DNA of 64,000 nucleotides from Paraphysomonas bandaiensis. Its lineage: Eukaryota > Protista > Chrysophyceae. The translations under genes and the position numbers were made by a program. Below, piece by piece: positions 12,369 through 55,325 of this stretch (position 1 is the stretch's first letter; each line of letters opens with the position of its first letter). The notes under the pieces were generated by a model, which saw only the letters and a program-made list of their open reading frames with translations, searched no databases and had not been told where the DNA came from. The stretch is from contig CBFFRP010000335.1 of the NCBI GenBank assembly GCA_965644295.1, positions 147,330 through 211,329 on the forward strand, written 5' to 3'.

Positions 12369-13734
12369 ACTCAGCATATCACGGCGGCATGTACTACCTC
12401 CCTGTAGACGTGTACAGGGTGTCGCAGGGGTTGAGTTGCTGATAGATATTCACTTGTGTTCGTGTCGAGGGATACTGTATGAGGAAAGAACAAGACGGCA
12501 GGGAAGACTCCATCACAATAATCTCCAACTGTATGTATACGTATATGCATGTACAGCATACAGAGTACATGTACAATATACGTAACAGTAAGAACATCTA
12601 TCAGCTGTACTTGTATACCTATACGTACGTACTCTGTGTACATACAGCAGTATATGCATATTGTACTGCTGCAGTGGTGTATCATACCCAGCCAGCATGT
12701 GATTGGCTGATCTCAAGATCTATTGCTGTCTGTGTCGATATCCAGCAATATATCAACAGCCCGACATACAATGCAGCAGATGTCGATCAAACATAAAGTT
12801 TTACATACCATGTGGGCTAGTGGTTTGCAACAACATGTATGTATAGTTCATATAATAACTGGGCCTGTCTAAAGAGACCTGATGCACGGCGAGAAAGGCA
12901 TCGAAATGAACGTACAGAGCCGTATGGAATAAAGAGATGACATACTCTCGAGGTGGAGCCCGATACTACGGTAGCAAGGTAGCAAGCAATAAAGGCAATA
13001 GAATATTATCTATATCGATATAAATTGTGTTGATATTTTTTTAAAGCGGACGTTTCCACTCTCGAGTACGATTATTTTATTCCATGTGAAAAGAGAACTT
13101 AAATGTCATTTTTAGAAGTTGTTGTCCTTATTGAAGTCTTTACCTCTTGTTGTACTGTCTCCGAATCTTATAAAGTGGAAGCCCCATCACAACAATTTAA
13201 ATAAATGTACTGAAGTTGATCAAGTAGTCATTATAGTCTCTCAACATATGTGTGGAATTCATGGCTGTAGAACAGGTGCATGCTGTATCCGTAGTGTTCA
13301 AACAGGTGTTGACTCAAACTCAGTCTATTCTATAATAACAAAGATAATCTAAATTTTGGATTAGACTAAAACTACATGGGTATTGATCGTTGCAAACGCA
13401 TATATAACTCGTGTTGTTCACATGCTGACACGTCAACTGCTAACTAATGACATTAAGTATATAACTCGTGCGTGGAGTTAATGCAAAGGTAAGTGTAGTC
13501 TATTCGTACATGACGTATCATATTTTTCAAGGTCGTCACTCTAAACTAGCAGTCCACGAATAAACTGATAACCTGGATACAAGTACTAATGCTGACACCA
13601 AATTATGATTATAAGAAACAATAGAACAGGTGAAATAAAGAAATGAACCAATAACTCGAACATTACTTAAATTCAAAACATTTAACTGGTTACAGAAGAG
13701 AAATATGTGGGTAGTAATACAAATACCACCATGT

Positions 13735-14931
13735 TCATCGCTTCTCAAACAGATAATGACTCACAAAGTATTCCCCGCCGTCATTGTACGAAAAAAATTC
13801 CGAGCAGCTGATAAAAAATGTTCTCCATCGAGCGAACCATTTAATTACATTATTTTTTCCATAGTATTCTGCAAAAAGTTCTTTGACTTTATTCCGATGT
13901 GCGTCCATTCGTTGCAGCCATGCCTCGAGGGTTAATGAATAGTGTTTGCCATTGACAGCCCACTGATCGCGTAGGACGAAATCCCGTTGAAAATGAAGCA
14001 GCAAATCATCACTTGGTAGAGTACCCCCCGCAAAGAAATATTTTGTCATCCAGTCCTTCTCACTGGTAACTTCATAATGGGAAGGCAGCCATCTACTGAC
14101 AAATATGTGTACAAACAGTAGCCCAGAGGGTTTCAGCAGTCCTGAAAGTTTATGAAGCAGCTTCTCATAATTTTTCATGTGCTCAAACATTTCAATCGAT
14201 AAAAGTCGGTCAAATGTCCCTAGTAGAGATGAATCAAACTCAGCTGTAGAGATATCGCATGTTAATACTTCAACATTGTGCAATCCCCGGTGGGAGGCTT
14301 CGGTCAATATATATTCTCTCTGAGTTCGCGAGTTACTCAATCCCACGACTGTACATTTCGGAAAAGTTTCAGCTAACCACAATGTCAAGCATCCCCACCC
14401 GCATCCAACATCCATTATTCTTAGAGTAGATTCAGTTTCAATATGTGCTCGTTGGGCATACATCTGCAACATGCTAATTTCAGCGTCATTCAGTAACTTC
14501 GATGCATCCCCACGTGACACGTTCTCAGGATACAGACAGGAGCTATACTTTTGTCGTTCACCGAGAACAAGGTTAAAAAAACGTGTATCGACCTCGTAAT
14601 GTTGTTCATTTGCCTCTGAGGTTTGTTCAGCAATATTACGCGTACGAAGATCTGCGATAAATTCCCTCTTCATTGGCAAAGTTTCACCTAAACTAAGCTG
14701 AAGCTGGCTCTGCTTATCTTCACCAATCAGATAGCGGCATCCCATACGCGTAATAAAGTCTGGTAACATACAGCAATCATGAAGCGCAATGCAGAGTTTG
14801 AAAATCAAGCTTTTTCCTGCGTTTGTTAGTACGATACCTCCAATCACGCACGATACGCCAGCTGCACCATAGAGAACTTCCTTACTATACGAGCAGCCTC
14901 TGAAGGAACGAAAACAACAACAATCTGGCAT
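13735..14931 (-). CDS. SAM-dependent methyltransferase, CFA-synthase / coclaurine N-methyltransferase-like, intronless
   Basis: ANEQHYEV, KYSSCLY, motif I MDVGCGWG, FDRLLSIEMFEHMKNY, WMTKYFFAGGTLPS. Confidence 0.9.
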   Translation of the reverse strand: MPDCCCFRSFRGCSYSKEVLYGAAGVSCVIGGIVLTNAGKSLIFKLCIALHDCCMLPDFITRMGCRYLIGEDKQSQLQLSLGETLPMKREFIADLRTRNIAEQTSEANEQHYEVDTRFFNLVLGERQKYSSCLYPENVSRGDASKLLNDAEISMLQMYAQRAHIETESTLRIMDVGCGWGCLTLWLAETFPKCTVVGLSNSRTQREYILTEASHRGLHNVEVLTCDISTAEFDSSLLGTFDRLLSIEMFEHMKNYEKLLHKLSGLLKPSGLLFVHIFVSRWLPSHYEVTSEKDWMTKYFFAGGTLPSDDLLLHFQRDFVLRDQWAVNGKHYSLTLEAWLQRMDAHRNKVKELFAEYYGKNNVIKWFARWRTFFISCSEFFSYNDGGEYFVSHYLFEKR

Positions 14932-32328: not shown

Positions 32329-33734
32329 TTCTCCCCGCTAATCATTGAGCTTCCTAGTAGTTAGCTCAGCGCCTTTTCGTACGTGTCTATTAATGCTACC
32401 TTTAGTTGAGTAGGTAACTTTAAATTAACGACTGTAATATATACATGTTGTAGGAAAGTTTGCATAATTTTTACACTTTTAGTAGTCTCAACTTTTATTT
32501 TTAATTTTAGTAGTAGCATCTGCAAAATATAGTGGGAACAGATGGAAATTTTGGTAGGTTTGAAAATGACACTCCTGTTACAGTCATCTGAAGTGGGTTG
32601 GTATTTACTGAAAAACAGCTCACAGTGGCTGTAAGTTAAATAAACCTAATTCTGATGTATTTTTCATGTGTGTAGATCATAAATACGTGTTCTTCTTCTA
32701 TCAGATACACTGAATTTTATATCTAAAGTTGTGACGTGATTACGAAATACGATATATATCGGTTCACTATCACTTGGCCTGTATACTTTCCGCCCTAATC
32801 AGTGTTTCATTGTGTGGTAGAAATGAGCATTTCACTGATTGTATCCTTGCTCTACTCTTACTCCTTAACCTTGGTTTGTTGAACACAATGAATTTGAAGT
32901 AAGAAATTAGAATTATTAATCTAAACACTTCACATGAAATCTATTTTTATCTCTTGTGAACATCTACTCTCAGGAAAATAAAGAATTGATCTTTATAATA
33001 GTAAAAAAATGTTGGATTATTATAGTGTAAGTTCTCCCCGCTAATCATTGAGCTTCCTAGTAGTTAGCTCAGCGCCTTTTCGTACGTGTCTATTAATGCT
33101 ACCTTTAGTTGAGTAGGTAACTTTAAATTAACGACTGTAATATATACATGTTGTAGGAAAGTTTGCATAATTTTTACACTTTTAGTAGTCTCAACTTTTA
33201 TTTTTAATTTTAGTAGTAGCATCTGCAAAATATAGTGGGAACAGATGGAAATTTTGGTAGGTTTGAAAATGACACTCCTGTTACAGTCATCTGAAGTGGG
33301 TTGGTATTTACTGAAAAACAGCTCACAGTGGCTGTAAGTTAAATAAACCTAATTCTGATGTATTTTTCATGTGTGTAGATCATAAATACGTGTTCTTCTT
33401 CTATCAGATACACTGAATTTTATATCTAAAGTTGTGACGTGATTACGAAATACGATATATATCGGTTCACTATCACTTGGCCTGTATACTTTCCGCCCTA
33501 ATCAGTGTTTCATTGTGTGGTAGAAATGAGCATTTCACTGATTGTATCCTTGCTCTACTCTTACTCCTTAACCTTGGTTTGTTGAACACAATGAATTTGA
33601 AGTAAGAAATTAGAATTATTAATCTAAACACTTCACATGAAATCTATTTTTATCTCTTGTGAACATCTACTCTCAGGAAAATAAAGAATTGATCTTTATA
33701 ATAGTAAAAAAATGTTGGATTATTATAGTGTAAG
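32329..33734. repeat. Tandem duplication, 2 x 703 bp
   Basis: 32329-33031 is repeated at 33032-33734; no differences were seen by eye. Confidence 0.95.
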
Positions 33735-34450
33735 TAATGAATACGATAGAGTGAAAATTATGAATAACAATATAGAACATAGCTATCATGCACAACGGAA
33801 TAGTTAGAAGTGTAACTGATAATGACGACATTACGATGACGATCATGTATCTTCGACAGATACTCTTTCTATTTCAGTTCATGATATATCTCATTGAGCA
33901 TTATAACTCACAGATACAATCTTGTATTTAGCTGAATCCTAGTAAGGAGCATCTGTTATCATATGTTCACAAGTTACTCCTATATCTTATATAGTCACAC
34001 ATCAGTAACTGAATTTACTACCTTTACACCCGTTACACCTATGAGTTGATTTCACCTATTGCATACTATTAACTCTTCTGACTCTTACACGCCTACTATA
34101 TTGCTAATAATAAGACGTTCACTATCACACTATGAACTCACTTCATTTGCACAATCTATATCGCATCATACTGCAGCACTCAACATTGTGTGTTGCCCAT
34201 TGAGTGCACTCTCATATTTATATATTAAATATAATTGTATATTTTGGTAAATGTAAATGTATTTTTCATCATGTATTTTTTGATTGTATAATTTTAATTC
34301 TCTATCTCCAACTCAAAACAATGGGTATCACGTATTGAAATTAGTGAAAGAGGTCGAAGACGAATGTATATCTCAATTGATTTTTAATAAATGTACTATA
34401 CGAGACTATTTCGGGTGTGCAAGAAGTTAACTACAGTTATACACATAGCA

Positions 34451-37589: not shown

Positions 37590-37723
37590 ACATACATACA
37601 TACATACATACATACATACATACATACATACATACATACATACATACATACATACATACATACATACATACATACATACATACATACATACATACATACA
37701 TACATACATACATACATACATAC
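37590..37723 (+). repeat. (TACA)n microsatellite, ~33 units
   Basis: Direct read; ends ...catac immediately before LTR1. Confidence 0.99.
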
Positions 37724-37929
37724 TGTGGCATGAAACTCCTAGTTTTAGGGCTTGGGAGTTTCTCTCCTTCTGGAAACATGGGGTTTCCCTTCAGGATACG
37801 GTAGTCGAGTGGCAGTAGTTTCATGCCAGACAATTCATACATGATTCTTATCTACATAATAATCATATATTCTAGTCCTGCTCTGTTCTTGCTGTTAGCT
37901 ACGTACTTGTAGGCAGTGGTCTGGGCACA
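37724..37929 (+). mobile_element. Extra or solo LTR (206 bp, TGTG..CACA)
   Basis: Identical by eye to 38034-38239; flanked atac|LTR|atac. Confidence 0.92.
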
Positions 37930-38033
37930 ATACATACATACATACATACATACATACATACATACATACATACATACATACATACATACATACATACATA
38001 CATACATACATACATACATACATACATACATAC
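37930..38033 (+). repeat. (ATAC)26 microsatellite between two LTRs
   Basis: 104 nt, direct read. Confidence 0.99.
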
Positions 38034-38464
38034 TGTGGCATGAAACTCCTAGTTTTAGGGCTTGGGAGTTTCTCTCCTTCTGGAAACATGGGGTTTCCCT
38101 TCAGGATACGGTAGTCGAGTGGCAGTAGTTTCATGCCAGACAATTCATACATGATTCTTATCTACATAATAATCATATATTCTAGTCCTGCTCTGTTCTT
38201 GCTGTTAGCTACGTACTTGTAGGCAGTGGTCTGGGCACAATATCGATATTTTCCTGATTGTCTAGAAGGACTACAGCTTCCGCAAGGAAGGAGTGTGTAG
38301 AGCAAGAAGGGGGATGGCCAGGGGAGCCGATAACCTCTAGCTCGGGTTGTTGAGGGAAGGAGGAGGTTTTCTAGGGACCTCGTAAGCTCCAACCCTGATA
38401 TTGGACTGCAGAGGGATGCAGTGACCATGTAGAGGATCATGGGGACTCAGAGGAAGGCTCAAGT

Positions 38465-39470
38465 GGACTTAGAGGTGTTGCGAAGGAGCAGCAGGGTACT
38501 CTGTCCCTTGATGCAGATAGAGACTCTGATGTGTCCATCTTTGATTAGTGCTTCCGAAAGGAAGGAGTGTGTTTAGTTGTGTATGGGACTTTGAGTGAGC
38601 TGCGAGAGAGCAGCAGGGTACTCTGTCCCTTGTGATGTGTCTATCTTTGATTAGTGCTTCCGAAAGGAAGGAGTGTGTTTAGTTGTGTATGGGACTTTGA
38701 GTAAGCTGCGAGAGAGCAGCAGGGTACTCTGTCCCTTGTGATGTGTCTATCTTTGATTAGTGCTTCCGAAAGGAAGGAGTGTGTTTAGTTGTGTATGGGA
38801 CTTTGAGTGAGCTGCGAGAGAGCAGCAGGGTACTCTGTCCCTTGTGATGTGTCTATCTTTGATTAGTGCTTCCGAAAGGAAGGAGTGTGTTTAGTTGTGT
38901 ATGGGACTTTGAGTGAGCTGCGAGAGAGCAGCAGGGTACTCTGTCCCTTGTGATGTGTCTATCTTTGATTAGTGCTTCCGAAAGGAAGGAGTGTTGTTTG
39001 TTGTGTATGGGACTTTGAGTAAGCTGCGAGGGAGCAGCAGGGTACTCTGTCCCTTGTGATGTGTCTATCTTTGATTAGTGCTTCCGAAAGGAAGGAGTGT
39101 TGTTAGTTGTGTATGGGACTTTGAGTAAGCTGCGAGGGAGCAGCAGGGTACTCTGTCCCTTGTTGCAGATAGAGAGATTAGTGCTTCCGCAAGGAAGGAG
39201 TAAGTTTAGTTGTGTATGGGATTTAGAGTAAGAGAGTAAGCTGCGAGGGAGCGGCATGGTACTCTGGTCCTGGAAATAGATAGAGACTCTGATGAGTTAT
39301 GGGACATATAGAGGAAGCTGTGAGAGAGCGGCAGGGTACTCTGTCCCTTGATGCAGATAGAGAGATGAGTGCTTCCGAAAGGAAGGAGTAAGTTTAGTTG
39401 TGTATGGGACTTAGAGTAAGCTGCGAGGGAGCGGCATGATACTCTTTTCCTTGTGATAGTTAGAGACTCT
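38465..39470 (+). repeat. Internal tandem array of 106-bp structured units
   Basis: cttccgaaaggaag recurs at 38551, 38657, 38763, 38869, 38975 and 39081 (period 106), with rearranged copies at both ends. Confidence 0.95.
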
Positions 39471-39722
39471 GATGAGTCCTTTAGAACCGGGGCCCAAGAG
39501 ATGGTCACCGGCTTTGATAAGTGATTTATGAGCGCGGTCAGCGCAAGGCGAGCAGCCAACGTAGTGGGGGACAATGCATTCCCTCTTGCGAGAGAGAGAA
39601 ATGATCAGTCCGGGGGAGCAGTGTCTCCGAGCCTTGGCGTGTACGCGTTTTACCCTTGTGGGGGGGAACGAGCCAGCGTTCGTCTTCCACTACGTAAAAA
39701 TTAATCTTGAGGTCCGAGGGAG

Positions 39723-42010
39723 TTGGCCCCTCTGGACGTAGGAATCAGTGATATAGGGGAAGAGTGGTCGTACCCAGCGGAGGAACAGCTGCTTTCGCTG
39801 GGAGAAGATCTTTCAAATTTCTCAAATAGGTCGACAAGGGACCGAGAGGATATGAAAGAAATTCGCAACGATCAGTTAGACTCCATTGACTCTGATTATC
39901 TAGACTCTGAGGGTGAGTCTCCTACGATTCCAGAAAAGGTTTATGGGTCACCGGACCTACAAGAAAAGAGTCGTGAGGTCCTGTGGGATACAGGGATATC
40001 TTTCGATTAGGGATTCGAAAAGGAAAGCCCACGAAGTTAGAATTTTTAGTTAGAAGTCCGGAAACCAGCTGAGGCATGGCTGATGCCGGTAAGAAATTGC
40101 CTCGTAGGAGGTTAGATAGGAGTCGTCAGCGCGAACTCCAACGTTTAGTGGAAAAGTTAGAGCGGTTGGGAGCGATCCAACCTAGCTCGGCCACTCATTA
40201 TAGTCATTCTTTTGTAGATCCATAGCCACACAATAAGTGGCGATTAGTGTTGGATTATAAGAATCTCAACAAGGTTAGATCTGGCCAATTCCGAACATTA
40301 GGGATATGATTTATCGAATTGGTGCCAGTGGGCGAGGAGTCCCGTAATTGGGTCGCCTTTATTACTCAAAACGGGGTGTACGAGTGGCTCCGGCTCCCCA
40401 TGGGTTTGAAAGGTGTCCCGTCCTACTTCCAGCGGCAAATGCAAAGTAGTGCTAGCGGGTTTAGTGTATGAGATTTGTGAGATATATCTGGGTGAATGTG
40501 TTAAATTTGCTGGCTCGGAAGAGGAGCTGATTAAGGATTATCAGCGGGTTCGGAGAGATTTAGGAAATTTGGCCAAATACCCAGACACAGTTTATGGGTG
40601 TGGCAAATTTGGTAAGAGATTGCGTACGCGTATATGTGCTGATTGCGAAACCATTGCATGCAATGTTGGGGAATTATACTAAGTCGCAGGCTAGACTTAA
40701 GGTATTACAGTGGACGGAGGAGTCCAGTGTTGCCTTTGATGTGCTAAGGGAGCGCATTCATGAGTGTCCCTTGTTATTTTTTATGGATGATGTTTCCCCC
40801 ATCTTCCTATATACTGACGCGTCAATAATTGGTATAGGGGCACACTTGGTGCAAGTCGTGGAGGGTCACGAGCGCACAATTGGGATGATTAGTAAGGCGT
40901 TCGACTCAACGTTAGCTAAGTGGCACACCTGCGAGAAGGAAGGTTTTGCCATCTTTTATGCACTAAATAAGTGGGAATACTTGTTGAGGGATCGACGTTT
41001 TACGGTTCGAACCGATCACGATAATTTACGCCAACTCAAGCAGGAGTATGGCCACATTAAGCGAGTGCAGCGCTGGTTTATGTGTTTTCAGTCGTTTGAT
41101 ATCGTGTTCGAACACCTTCCAAGGGAAATGAATGTGGTGGCTGATGCTCTTAGTCGAGTTTGTGGGGTGGACGCATCCGACAAGATCGATGACAATCTGT
41201 GTTCTTCTCTCGAGCGGTGCCTGGAGGAAGAGTCACATACTGAGGATTAGCGCATCCCTAATCACCTCTGGAAGGCGATTAAGGCTTGTCACAATAGTGT
41301 AGTAGGCCACCATGGGGTGGAACGTACAATGGGAAAGTTGCGAAGGAGCAACAATGATTGGAAGAACATGCGTCAGCATGTTATACGTTTTATTAAGTGT
41401 TGTGTGTGTTGTCAACAGATGTCAACCATTAAGCCAGCAGTGTGGGTTCGGCTTTTTCCTCTATCTAAGTATTCCATGGGTGAGTGTATCTATATGGATT
41501 ATATTGAGGGTTTAATTCCCGGTGAGAATGGGTATACTAGTATTCTGGAGTGGAGCACTCCTTTACAGTAGAGTACTCAAAGGAAGAGAATGGTATGGTT
41601 GAGAGGGAGAATAAGGAAATTCTCCGTCATCTAAGGAATATTATTTTCGAGAAAGTGGTTTTAAAAAAAAAAAAAAATGGTCTGATGTGCTGCCAATGGT
41701 ACAACGTAGCAATCCATGGGTCGACAGGAGTGGCCCGGCACAGTTTTACTGTATGGAGATGCCATAAACCTAGAGGCAGGTTTTATTGTGGATAGGAAGA
41801 ATTTGTCTCCAAGGGAGGAGAAGGATCTGTCCGAGTGGGTTGACAGTACGAGGAACAGTTGCGTTGTTGAAGTATTTGAAGGCTCACTCTAACTATGCAG
41901 TACGAGCCCTACTACCCAAGAGAGAAACGAAGCGCTCCAGGTCTCCGAACACGGCGGCAGAAGAAGTCATTTCGAGTGAGGATGAGTCGTCGCAGCAGTC
42001 AGGAGCTTGA
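39723..42010 (+). pseudogene. Decayed Gypsy pol
   Basis: RT KWRLVLDYKNLN, WPIPNI, AFITQNGVYEWLRLPMGLKG, with YxDD changed to YLGE. RNase H YTDAS/EKE/TDH/VADALSR. Integrase H..GH..CVCC, MDY and NGMVER. Frameshifts, stops and deletions throughout. Confidence 0.92.
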
Positions 42011-42179
42011 TTTATGAGTTTTGACGGTTAAAATCCGCTCTGTCCAGGTGGCGGACACCTATGAGAAGGTTCTCATACATCACAATTTCGTTGGAGTGAT
42101 CAGATAGTAGGGGTGATTTTTTTGGGTGTTGTTTTGTTGTTAGAGTGTCATTTTTTTAGTACATGTGCCACAATTTTCC

Positions 42180-42195
42180 AAAAAAGGGGAAGGGG
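42180..42195 (+). other. Polypurine tract
   Basis: aaaaaaggggaagggg, 3 nt upstream of the 3' LTR. Confidence 0.85.
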
Positions 42196-42404
42196 TAGTG
42201 TGGCATGAAACTCCTAGTTTTAGGGCTTGGGAGTTTCTCTCCTTCTGGAAACATGGGGTTTCCCTTCAGGATACGGTAGTCGAGTGGCAGTAGTTTCATG
42301 CCAGACTATTCATACATGATTCTTATCTACATAATAATCATATATTCTAGTCCTGCTCTGTTCTTGCTGTTAGCTACGTACTTGTAGGCAGTGGTCTGGG
42401 CACA

Positions 42405-43012
42405 ATACATACATACATACATACATACATACATACATACATACATACATACATACATACATACATACATACATACATACATACATACATACATACATAC
42501 CTACATACATACATACATACATACATACATACATACATACATACATACATACATACATACATACATACATACATACATACATACATACATACATACATAC
42601 ATACATACATACATACATACATACATACATACATACATACATACATACATACATACATACATACATACATACATACATACATACATACATACATACATAC
42701 ATACATACATACATACATACATACATACATACATACATACATACATACATACATACATACATACATACATACATACATACATACATACATACATACATAC
42801 ATACATACACATACATACATACATACATACATACATACATACATACATACATACATACATACATACATACATACATACATACATACATACATACATACAT
42901 ACATACATACATACATACATACATACATACATACATACATACATACATACATACATACATACATACATACATACATACATACATACATACATACATACAT
43001 ACATACATACAT
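42405..43012 (+). repeat. (ATAC)n microsatellite, ~152 units
   Basis: Direct read; interruptions near 42501 and 42808. Confidence 0.99.
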
Positions 43013-54364: not shown

Positions 54365-54480
54365 ATGATCCTGACACAGCGACTTTTAATATTTGCTCTG
54401 GAAATGAATTGTTGCTTACTTCTGCCTACTGCACTGTTCCATAACAGACAGACAGTTACCCTCTCGACTTATCCACTGTT

Positions 54481-55325
54481 TGTATGTATGTATGTATGTA
54501 TGTATGTATGTATGTATGTATGTATGTATGTATGTATGTATGTATGTATGTATGTATGTATGTATGTATGTATGTATGTATATGTATGTTTGTATGTATG
54601 TATGTATGTATGTATGTATGTATGTATGTATGTATGTATGTATGTATGTATGTATGTATGTATGTATGTATGTATGTATGTATGTATGTATGTATGTATG
54701 TATGTATGTATGTATGTATGTATGTATGTATGTATGTATGTATGTATGTATGTATGTATGTATGTATGTATGTATGTATGTATGTATGTATGTATGTATG
54801 TATGTATGTATGTATGTATGTATGTATGTATGTATGTATGTATGTATGTATGTATGTATGTATGTATGTATGTATGTATGTATGTATGTATGTATGTATG
54901 TATGTATGTATGTATGTATGTATGTATGTATGTATGTATGTATGTATGTATGTATGTATGTATGTATGTATGTATGTATGTATGTATGTATGTATGTATG
55001 TATGTATGTATGTATGTATGTATGTATGTATGTATGTCTGTATGTCTGTATGTATGTATGTATGTATGTATGTATGTATGTATGTATGTATGTATGTATG
55101 TATGTATGTATGTATGTATGTATGTATGTATGTATGTATGTATGTATGTATGTATGTATGTATGTATGTATGTATGTATGTATGTATGTATGTATGTATG
55201 TATGTATGTATGTATGTATGTATGTATGTATGTATGTATGTATGTATGTATGTATGTATGTATGTATGTATGTATGTATGTATGTATGTATGTATGTATG
55301 TATGTATGTATGTATGTATGTATGT
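54481..55325 (+). repeat. (TATG)n microsatellite, ~211 units
   Basis: Direct read; interruptions near 54581-54590 and 55037-55046. Confidence 0.99.

What the first reader, a model, noticed from the sequence alone, without database searches (positions are those of the whole stretch)
38277..39470. gag position occupied by a tandem array of structured-RNA modules with structure-preserving variation
Seen: the 106-bp unit is not a multiple of 3 and has no sense ORF. It carries two hairpins. (i) CUUCC-GAAA-GGAAG occurs in 9 copies, and the only loop variant is GCAA (38277, 39184), still a GNRA tetraloop. (ii) GGGAC-uuu-GAGUR-a-GCUGC-gagaga-GCAGC-aggg-UACUC-u-GUCCC occurs in about 10 copies. Changes in it (GAGUG/GAGUA, GCAGC to GCGGC, GCUGC to GUUGC or GCUGU) swap Watson-Crick for G-U pairs, which only work on the sense RNA. 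Modules are also reshuffled at the array ends. Inference: an amplified packaging, dimerisation or protein-binding signal that lets a non-coding element capture a helper's Gag/Pol, or an undescribed ncRNA or ribozyme array.
Basis: partly seen in the sequence, partly recalled or inferred. Interest (0 to 1): 0.88.

Follow-up and report, generated by a model that had tools for sequence, protein, structure and literature searches.

The report
Hairpin array replacing gag in retrotransposon
A defective jumping gene from a marine microbe has lost its coat-protein gene and carries about ten head-to-tail copies of a small RNA-hairpin segment taken from the start of that gene, and a related element did much the same independently, which hints (unproven) that these hairpins are the tag by which such parasites get packaged by a helper.

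Summary
There is a 106-bp tandem array with no ORF, 9 copies of a 5-bp hairpin with a GNRA-type loop (H1) and 10 copies of a three-stem hairpin (H2), all on the sense strand.

It lies inside a short Ty3/gypsy-type LTR retrotransposon (LTRs 205/206 identical) that lacks nearly all of gag and the protease and has a badly broken pol. Intact-looking relatives from marine metagenomes start gag about 22 nt after the LTR. The first ~180 nt of their gag RNA form three short hairpins, each in one copy.

The window keeps a decayed stub of that stretch. H2 descends from the third hairpin. The origin of H1 is unresolved.

A second derivative, deleted independently, has multiplied the other two hairpins into 1-3 copies of 102 nt.

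Inside the window array the stem changes are only to G-U, with no compensatory pairs, and the fold is no better than shuffles. Across the family, three pairs show compensatory changes and about 98% of pairs are kept.

No Rfam family or ribozyme matches.

Best reading (about 0.5): a cis-acting 5' gag RNA signal, probably for packaging or dimerisation, multiplied in trans-dependent derivatives. Main rival: a neutral minisatellite.

I rate it a new variant of a known kind, of moderate interest.

The parts
37590..37723 (.). (ACAT)n microsatellite touching the outer edge of the first LTR copy
37724..37929 (+). Extra LTR copy (206 bp, TG..CA), identical to the 5' LTR; a solo LTR or the product of a rearrangement
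37930..38033 (.). (ATAC)26 between the two upstream LTR copies
38034..38239 (+). 5' LTR of the element
   Evidence: about 75-80% similar to the LTR of relative L056
38240..38262 (+). Primer-binding-site-like stretch; its first 11 nt are a palindrome conserved in L055-L060 and L064
38263..38456 (+). Decayed stub of the 5' end of gag (one part). It contains the first, isolated H1 hairpin at 38277-38290 and worn versions of the relatives' hairpins A and B
   Evidence: Local alignment of 38296-38363 to L056 gag nt 621-688, z 5.6, 0/200 shuffles
38457..38538 (+). Oldest H2 module (M0) with the long tail; it belongs to an older 122-nt unit
38539..39171 (+). Core array: six units of 106 bp (the last is 103), each H1 + linker + H2, 89-100% identical
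39172..39477 (+). Distal, older and rearranged modules: H1+H2 with an 8-nt insertion, then H2 alone, then H1+H2
39478..39521 (+). Short stretch of unknown origin between the array and the pol remnant
   Evidence: No similarity to L033 or L056
39522..41745 (+). Broken pol remnant (one part): linker between protease and RT, RT (about 40207-40710), RNase H (about 40711-41097), integrase zinc-binding region (about 41350-41424). No integrase core was detected
41880..42179 (+). 3' untranslated region, conserved with L056
42180..42195 (+). Polypurine tract next to the 3' LTR
42199..42404 (+). 3' LTR, 205/206 identical to the 5' LTR
42405..43012 (.). (ATAC)152 microsatellite touching the outer edge of the 3' LTR

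Best explanation
The array is the 5' interior of a non-autonomous Ty3/gypsy-type LTR retrotransposon of a marine planktonic eukaryote. It has no gag and no protease, and its pol is broken.

In intact-looking relatives, gag begins about 22 nt after the LTR and primer-binding site. The first ~180 nt of their gag RNA fold into three short hairpins (A, B, C), each present once.

The window copy kept a worn stub of that stretch and lost the rest of gag and the protease. It then multiplied a 122-nt segment, later shortened to 106 nt, into about ten head-to-tail modules.

A sister lineage produced a second derivative with different deletion ends. It multiplied the neighbouring A+B segment into 1, 2 or 3 copies of 102 nt.

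I read hairpins A-C as a cis-acting signal on the genomic RNA, most likely the packaging/dimerisation region that a helper's Gag must recognise. I read array growth as slippage or template-switch duplication. Such duplication becomes tolerable, and possibly advantageous in competing for helper protein, once the stretch no longer has to encode Gag.

Shown: the anatomy, the loss of gag and protease, the descent of H2 from gag hairpin C, the second independent array with variable copy number, and the pair counts.

Inferred: mobilisation in trans, constraint at the RNA level, the packaging role, and any selective benefit of multiple copies.
For: Element anatomy: LTRs, polypurine tract, RT-RNase H-integrase order.

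Relatives:
- L032 matches the window pol at 88-94% nt and L033 at 75-84%.
- L056-L058 show LTR, primer-binding site, then the gag ATG within about 22 nt, followed by a 744-aa ORF without stops.
- P0182 is one unbroken 1383-aa gag-protease-RT-RNase H ORF of the same cluster.

Loss of gag and protease: no similarity in the window apart from the stub.

Lesions older than the insertion: against L032's ORFs, pol has 8 frameshifting indels, 3 stops and 1 deletion of at least 30 nt, while the two LTRs differ at only 1 of 206 positions.

H2 derives from gag hairpin C: units align to L056 720-751 with z 3.0-6.5 (0-20 of 1000 shuffles), and two control sequences do not. There is a 14-nt exact match in the collinear position.

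The L056 5' gag RNA folds better than shuffles: z -3.3 for 625-760 and -2.4 for 566-800.

Second array: L059/L060/L062 carry 2.9 units of 102 bp, L064 and P0186-P0188 carry 2, and L055 carries about 1. These units derive from gag nt ~630-732 and are joined to a different point on the protease side.

Pair conservation:
- Hairpins A and B: 9 distinct rows, 98.6% of 216 cells paired, 2 pairs with changes on both sides (U-A / U-G / C-G and U-A / C-G). Only 7 of 500 shuffles reach the covariation score, and no slid register shows such changes.
- Inner stem of hairpin C: 35/35 cells paired, 4 of 5 pairs vary, 1 compensatory flip between L056 and the window modules.
- The H1 stem is unchanged in 9/9 copies, although older units differ from the core at 20-23% of positions.

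The intact relative has no tandem repeat in 5' gag.
Against: - Within the window's own array there is no compensatory change, and shuffles do as well.
- The sense-strand fold of a unit is not better than shuffles of its G+U-rich composition.
- The one-sided changes to G-U are A-to-G and C-to-U on a strand that is itself enriched in G and T, so mutation bias could produce them.
- Stems are not significantly less variable than linkers among the non-coding units (7/48 versus 14/51, p 0.14).
- The shuffle control can be exceeded by related sequences without any structure (tool caveat), and the independent events are few.
- Two arrays in the same stub could reflect a duplication hot spot at hairpins rather than selection.
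- The 102-nt unit of the second derivative keeps the gag reading frame (a 105-aa ORF), so a coding repeat is not excluded there.
- H1 has no significant counterpart in any relative.
- No 5' end of an intact member of the window's own sub-lineage was found.
- There are no expression, probing or binding data.
Confidence: 0.5

Rival explanations
1. Neutral minisatellite. The 5' gag stub of a dead or parasitic element is free to vary, and hairpin-forming inverted repeats promote replication slippage or reverse-transcriptase template switching. The arrays would then be by-products without function, and the preserved pairing would reflect recent common descent plus a transition bias towards G and T.
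For: Six units are 89-100% identical. There is no compensatory change inside the window array. The sense fold equals that of shuffles. The strand is G/T-rich. Copy number varies from 1 to 3 among copies of the second derivative. Tandem repeats in untranslated parts of LTR retrotransposons are a known source of satellites (PMC9659126, PMC7004042).
Against: Both arrays lie in the roughly 150-250-nt gag stub rather than elsewhere in interiors of 1.1-3.9 kb. Three compensatory pair changes occur across the family with about 98% of cells paired. The H1 stem is intact in all 9 copies despite about 20% divergence of the older units. H2 gained a third stem after leaving the coding context.
Confidence: 0.32
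2. Array of DNA-level protein-binding sites downstream of the promoter, comparable to the repeated host-factor sites in the 5' untranslated region of Drosophila gypsy. The inverted repeats would be dimer binding sites.
For: H1 and all three H2 stems are Watson-Crick perfect in the core unit, so they are true DNA palindromes (z -5.4 with G-U pairs disallowed). The antisense strand folds equally well in core units.
Against: Diverged modules keep sense-strand pairing through G-U pairs, which are A-C mismatches on the other strand. Sense folds are 5-10 kcal/mol more stable than antisense in the four old modules. The homologous hairpins sit inside the gag ORF of intact relatives. No binding factor is known.
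Confidence: 0.07
3. An independent structured non-coding RNA or self-cleaving ribozyme array, as in retrozymes with hammerhead ribozymes.
For: Repeated hairpin modules in a non-coding, non-autonomous LTR element.
Against: No Rfam family matches at gathering score over the whole window, and none matches even at E<=10 over the array; the best scores are 13-17 bits against cut-offs of 36-80. The modules derive from gag coding sequence. They lie in the interior, not in the LTRs.
Confidence: 0.03
4. Residual coding repeats: the units are still translated as a repeated N-terminal Gag peptide.
For: H2 descends from gag codons. The 102-nt unit of the second derivative is a multiple of 3 and sits in a 105-aa ORF in the gag frame.
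Against: In the window, 106 is not a multiple of 3, there are stops in all frames with no sense ORF over 45 aa, and the array shows no protein-level similarity to Gag (best E 1.5).
Confidence: 0.03

Closest known systems
Non-autonomous LTR retrotransposons that lack gag or all coding capacity (barley BARE-2, LARD, TRIM; murine ETn/VL30-type elements). Recalled from general knowledge, not tested here.
   Same: LTRs, primer-binding site and polypurine tract are kept. Gag is missing, and propagation presumably depends on proteins of an autonomous relative. The cis-acting 5' region is retained.
   Different: Here the retained 5' gag RNA segment has been multiplied in tandem, in two independently deleted derivatives. 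Pol remnants persist. The host is an unidentified marine protist-like eukaryote.
Tandem repeats in untranslated regions of Ty3/gypsy elements that seed satellites (pea Ogre PisTR-A, maize CRM repeats), reviewed in PMC9659126 and PMC7004042.
   Same: Head-to-tail minisatellite inside an LTR retrotransposon, non-coding, with variable copy number.
   Different: Those arrays lie mostly in 3' untranslated regions or LTRs of autonomous elements. This one is built from hairpins of former gag coding sequence, directly after the primer-binding site of gag-less copies.
Packaging/dimerisation leader signals of retroviruses and yeast Ty elements that extend into 5' gag (general knowledge).
   Same: Position right after the primer-binding site, reaching into the start of gag. 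Clusters of short stem-loops with purine-rich loops. Retained in defective derivatives.
   Different: No sequence or Rfam relationship was found. Binding by Gag is untested. The available Gag sequence of relative L053 shows no zinc knuckle. Multiplication into an array is not a described feature of those signals as far as I know.
Retrozymes (non-autonomous LTR retroelements carrying hammerhead ribozymes).
   Same: Non-coding, structured-RNA-bearing parasites of Ty3/gypsy elements.
   Different: No ribozyme family matches, and the modules are interior rather than in the LTRs.
Repeated host-factor binding sites in the 5' untranslated region of Drosophila gypsy (general knowledge).
   Same: Repeated short modules just downstream of the 5' LTR.
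   Different: Those act as DNA sites. Here the variation favours pairing on the sense RNA.

Membership tests
Ty3/gypsy-type LTR retrotransposon | Two near-identical LTRs with TG..CA ends | tested here: met
   206-bp LTRs, 205/206 identical
Ty3/gypsy-type LTR retrotransposon | Polypurine tract directly before the 3' LTR | tested here: met
   42180-42195
Ty3/gypsy-type LTR retrotransposon | Pol domain order RT - RNase H - integrase | tested here: met
   RVT_1, RT_RNaseH and Integrase_H2C2 pieces occur in that order. Relatives add the rve core.
Ty3/gypsy-type LTR retrotransposon | Primer-binding site complementary to a tRNA 3' end | tested here: inconclusive
   A conserved 11-nt palindrome follows the LTR. 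It does not begin with the complement of the tRNA CCA end. No tRNA set from the host was available.
Ty3/gypsy-type LTR retrotransposon | Target-site duplication | tested here: inconclusive
   Both flanks are the same 4-bp microsatellite, so a duplication cannot be read.
Non-autonomous (gag-less) derivative mobilised in trans | Gag absent while the cis elements are intact | tested here: met
Non-autonomous (gag-less) derivative mobilised in trans | Disabling lesions older than the insertion | tested here: met
   At least 11 lesions in about 1.7 kb of pol, against 1 difference between the LTRs. The timing is an inference.
Non-autonomous (gag-less) derivative mobilised in trans | Several dispersed copies with the same defective structure | not testable with these tools
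   The window's genome is not in the collections. For the second derivative, the same deletion occurs on contigs from several samples.
Evolutionarily conserved RNA structure | Compensatory (two-sided) base-pair changes | tested here: inconclusive
   0 within the window array. 3 pairs across the family. 7/500 shuffles reach the score for hairpins A and B, and 73/500 for the inner stem of C.
Evolutionarily conserved RNA structure | Folding energy beyond composition-matched shuffles on the functional strand | tested here: inconclusive
   Window unit z -1.5. Relatives z -2.4 to -3.4.
Described RNA family / self-cleaving ribozyme (Rfam 15) | Covariance-model match at or near the gathering score | tested here: not met
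   No hit at gathering score. The best hit at E<=10 is 17 bits against a cut-off of 80.
Packaging/dimerisation signal | Located after the primer-binding site and into 5' gag on the genomic RNA | tested here: met
Packaging/dimerisation signal | Specific recognition by Gag; needed for encapsidation | not testable with these tools
   No data.
TE-derived minisatellite | Head-to-tail units, high identity, variable copy number | tested here: met

The most novel reading that the evidence does not exclude
Gag-less derivatives of this family gain by multiplying the hairpin signal that the helper's Gag recognises. This would be an 'amplified capture signal' that evolved at least twice from different parts of the same 5' gag RNA region, making copy number of a packaging signal a visible axis of conflict between a retrotransposon and its own parasites.
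Probability: 0.25. Interest if true: 0.75.

Novelty: new variant of a known kind. Interest (0 to 1): 0.5.

Why it matters
Cis-acting RNA signals of LTR retrotransposons outside yeast, plants and animals are almost unknown. Here, natural deletion derivatives point to a roughly 180-nt hairpin-rich stretch at the start of gag as the part that is kept, and even multiplied, when the rest of gag is lost. If the multiplication is adaptive, it would be a simple and measurable way for a parasite of a parasite to compete for helper proteins. The family's consistent contact with ACAT microsatellites may also point to a target preference not described for LTR elements.

Tried and rejected
- Rfam over the whole window and, permissively, over the array: nothing.
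- One metagenome scan and two viral-contig scans with H1 and H2 patterns: only single chance hits, none carrying the other hairpin.
- Protein search with the antisense ORF of the array: nothing.
- Relatives of the RNase H piece in viral contigs: nothing.
- Exact look-ups of 12 window ORFs: the genome is not in the collections, so the host stays unidentified. It is gene-dense and intron-poor, and it is not human. Relatives come from Tara Oceans and other marine metagenome assemblies.
- 'Expanded ancestral leader': I held this view until and then rejected it, because relatives have almost no leader.
- H2 derived from the conserved 3' untranslated element: rejected (covariance-model E 0.21; the alignment is unconvincing).
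- The unit derived from the deletion junction of the second derivative, or from the gag part just before the protease: not significant (z at most 2).
- H1 derived from the 3' strand of hairpin B: not significant (z 1.0).
- A 16-nt look-alike of the inner hairpin within the integrase zinc region: judged to be chance.
- Bacterial promoter/terminator scan: irrelevant for this organism.

Full report
**1. What is at the coordinates**

The window is lower-case eukaryotic DNA at about 41% G+C. It has many uninterrupted ORFs for ordinary cellular proteins: Rsm22-like, cyclin, a CMAS-type methyltransferase, an M28 peptidase and a cathepsin L. It is not human. The genome is not in the protein collections.

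TRF reports a 106-bp period at 38527-39232, 6.7 copies at 95% identity. The first hairpin (H1) has a 5-bp stem and a GAAA or GCAA loop. It occurs nine times, only on the + strand and only inside 38277-39385, where 0.02 occurrences are expected by chance. A covariance model of the second hairpin (H2, three 5-bp stems) finds ten modules between 38457 and 39459. No sense ORF over 45 aa crosses the array.

**2. The element around it**

Three copies of a 206-bp LTR lie at 37724, 38034 and 42199. The two upstream copies are identical, and the 3' copy differs at one position. A polypurine tract abuts the 3' LTR.

The interior (38240-42198) holds the array followed by pieces of RT, RNase H and the integrase zinc-binding region, in Ty3/gypsy order. 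An ACAT-type microsatellite touches every outer LTR edge.

**3. Relatives**

A protein search with the RNase H piece found short contigs from marine metagenome assemblies. L032 matches the window pol at 88-94% nt and L033 at 75-84%. L053 is more distant, at 62% aa.

Cluster look-ups then led to longer contigs.
- L056-L058 show the 3' untranslated region, polypurine tract, LTR, a conserved 11-nt palindromic primer-binding-like site, and a gag start about 22 nt later. A 744-aa gag-protease ORF without stops follows.
- A cluster member, P0182, is a single 1383-aa gag-protease-RT-RNase H ORF.

The family therefore has essentially no leader, and gag occupies exactly the place where the window has the array.

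**4. What the window copy lacks**

Only 38296-38363 is demonstrably homologous to gag. It matches L056 nt 621-688 with z 5.6, and 0/200 shuffles do as well. Nothing else in the window resembles the relatives' Gag or protease, even at E<=10. Homology to pol resumes at 39522.

Against L032's open frames, the pol remnant has 8 frameshifting indels, 3 stops and 1 deletion of at least 30 nt. No integrase core is detectable. I give counts only.

About eleven lesions in 1.7 kb, set against one LTR difference in 206 bp, imply that the copy was already defective when it inserted. That points to mobilisation in trans (inference).

**5. Origin of the modules**

The 5' gag RNA of L056 (nt 625-760) folds into three hairpins (A, B, C) with z -3.3. 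The window's units align to L056 720-751, which is hairpin C, with z 3.0-6.5 (0-20 of 1000 shuffles reach the score); two control sequences do not align. This includes a 14-nt exact match in the collinear position.

H2 is thus a lengthened descendant of hairpin C, with a middle stem that L056 lacks. Alternative sources scored no better than shuffles. H1 has no significant counterpart, so its origin is unresolved.

The 106-bp unit is the older 122-bp unit minus 16 bp. Six units are 89-100% identical, so they are recent copies.

**6. A second, independent array**

Contigs L059, L060, L062, L064 and L055 come from several samples, including Tara Oceans records. They carry another gag-less derivative of the L056 lineage: LTR, primer-binding site, decayed gag start, a 102-bp tandem repeat, then the protease region.

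Its unit derives from gag nt ~630-732 (hairpins A and B). Its deletion ends differ from the window's on both sides. Copy number is about 1 (L055), 2 (L064, P0186-P0188) or 2.9 (L059, L060). The intact relative has no tandem repeat there.

**7. Is RNA structure conserved?**

Inside the window:
- In pair counts, 93-98% of cells are paired, with 12 cells changed to G-U and 8 unpaired. Shuffles do equally well.
- The sense fold of a unit is no better than shuffles (z -1.5). With G-U pairs disallowed it is z -5.4, so the inverted repeats are real but the energy argument fails on this G+U-rich strand.
- The G-U changes are A-to-G and C-to-U on a strand with 34% G, 28% T and only 15% C, so mutation bias is a live alternative.

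With relatives included:
- Hairpins A and B keep 98.6% of 216 cells paired over 9 distinct rows.
- They have two pairs changed on both sides. 7/500 shuffles reach the covariation score, and none of the slid registers shows such changes.
- The inner stem of C is paired in 35/35 cells, varies at 4 of 5 pairs and has one C-G/G-C flip.
- Stems are not significantly less variable than linkers among the non-coding units (p 0.14).

I rate this as moderate evidence, not proof.

**8. Interpretation**

The best reading is a cis-acting 5' gag RNA signal, probably for packaging or dimerisation. It has been retained and multiplied in trans-dependent derivatives. The multiplication arises by slippage or template switching once the coding constraint is lifted.

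The main rival is a neutral minisatellite at a hairpin hot spot. DNA-binding sites, a ribozyme or ncRNA array, and translated repeats are minor rivals. Tandem repeats in untranslated parts of LTR retrotransposons are well known (PMC9659126, PMC7004042). What is unusual here is that they are built from 5' gag hairpins, in two independently deleted derivatives.

Noticed in passing
window 37590-38033 and 42405-43012; L059:1513-1537; L064:1-40: An ACAT-type microsatellite directly abuts the outer LTR edges of this family in the window (three junctions) and in two unrelated metagenome contigs, in one of them in the opposite orientation. This may mean microsatellite-targeted integration. A target-site duplication cannot be read inside a 4-bp repeat.
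   Followed up: partly
window 37724-38239: LTR-(ATAC)26-LTR upstream of the element: the 310-bp block of microsatellite plus LTR is present twice at 100% identity. It could be a solo LTR from a second insertion, an unequal exchange followed by LTR-LTR deletion, or an assembly artefact.
   Followed up: no
window 54477-55325: A further (TGTA)212 microsatellite with no LTR nearby, so long ACAT-type repeats are common in this genome.
   Followed up: no
window 32329-33735: A perfect 703-bp tandem duplication (two copies, 100% identical). It is either a very recent duplication or an assembly artefact.
   Followed up: partly
window 38240-38250; L056:567-577 and the same site in L055, L057-L060, L064: The 11 nt after the LTR are conserved across both lineages and form a palindrome. 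They do not look like a canonical tRNA-end primer-binding site, which raises the question of how priming works in this family.
   Followed up: no
window 41337-41353; L032:1751-1767; L033:2116-2132; L056:4529-4545: A 16-17-nt near-copy of the oldest module's inner hairpin lies inside the integrase zinc-binding coding region and is conserved in relatives (covariance-model E 0.02-0.1). It is probably chance.
   Followed up: partly
L059:1-3429: The scaffold shows LTR, array, protease part and (CATA)6 repeated with a 1423-bp period. This is either a real tandem arrangement of a truncated derivative or an assembler loop through identical LTRs and microsatellites.
   Followed up: no
window 42005-42045; L056:175-215: A stretch of about 35 nt in the 3' untranslated region is identical between the window and L056, although their LTRs are only about 75-80% similar. 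It may be a second cis-acting element.
   Followed up: no
window 13640-13739 (-): A tRNA-Arg(TCT) gene of 100 nt, presumably containing an intron. It is the only tRNA gene in the window.
   Followed up: no
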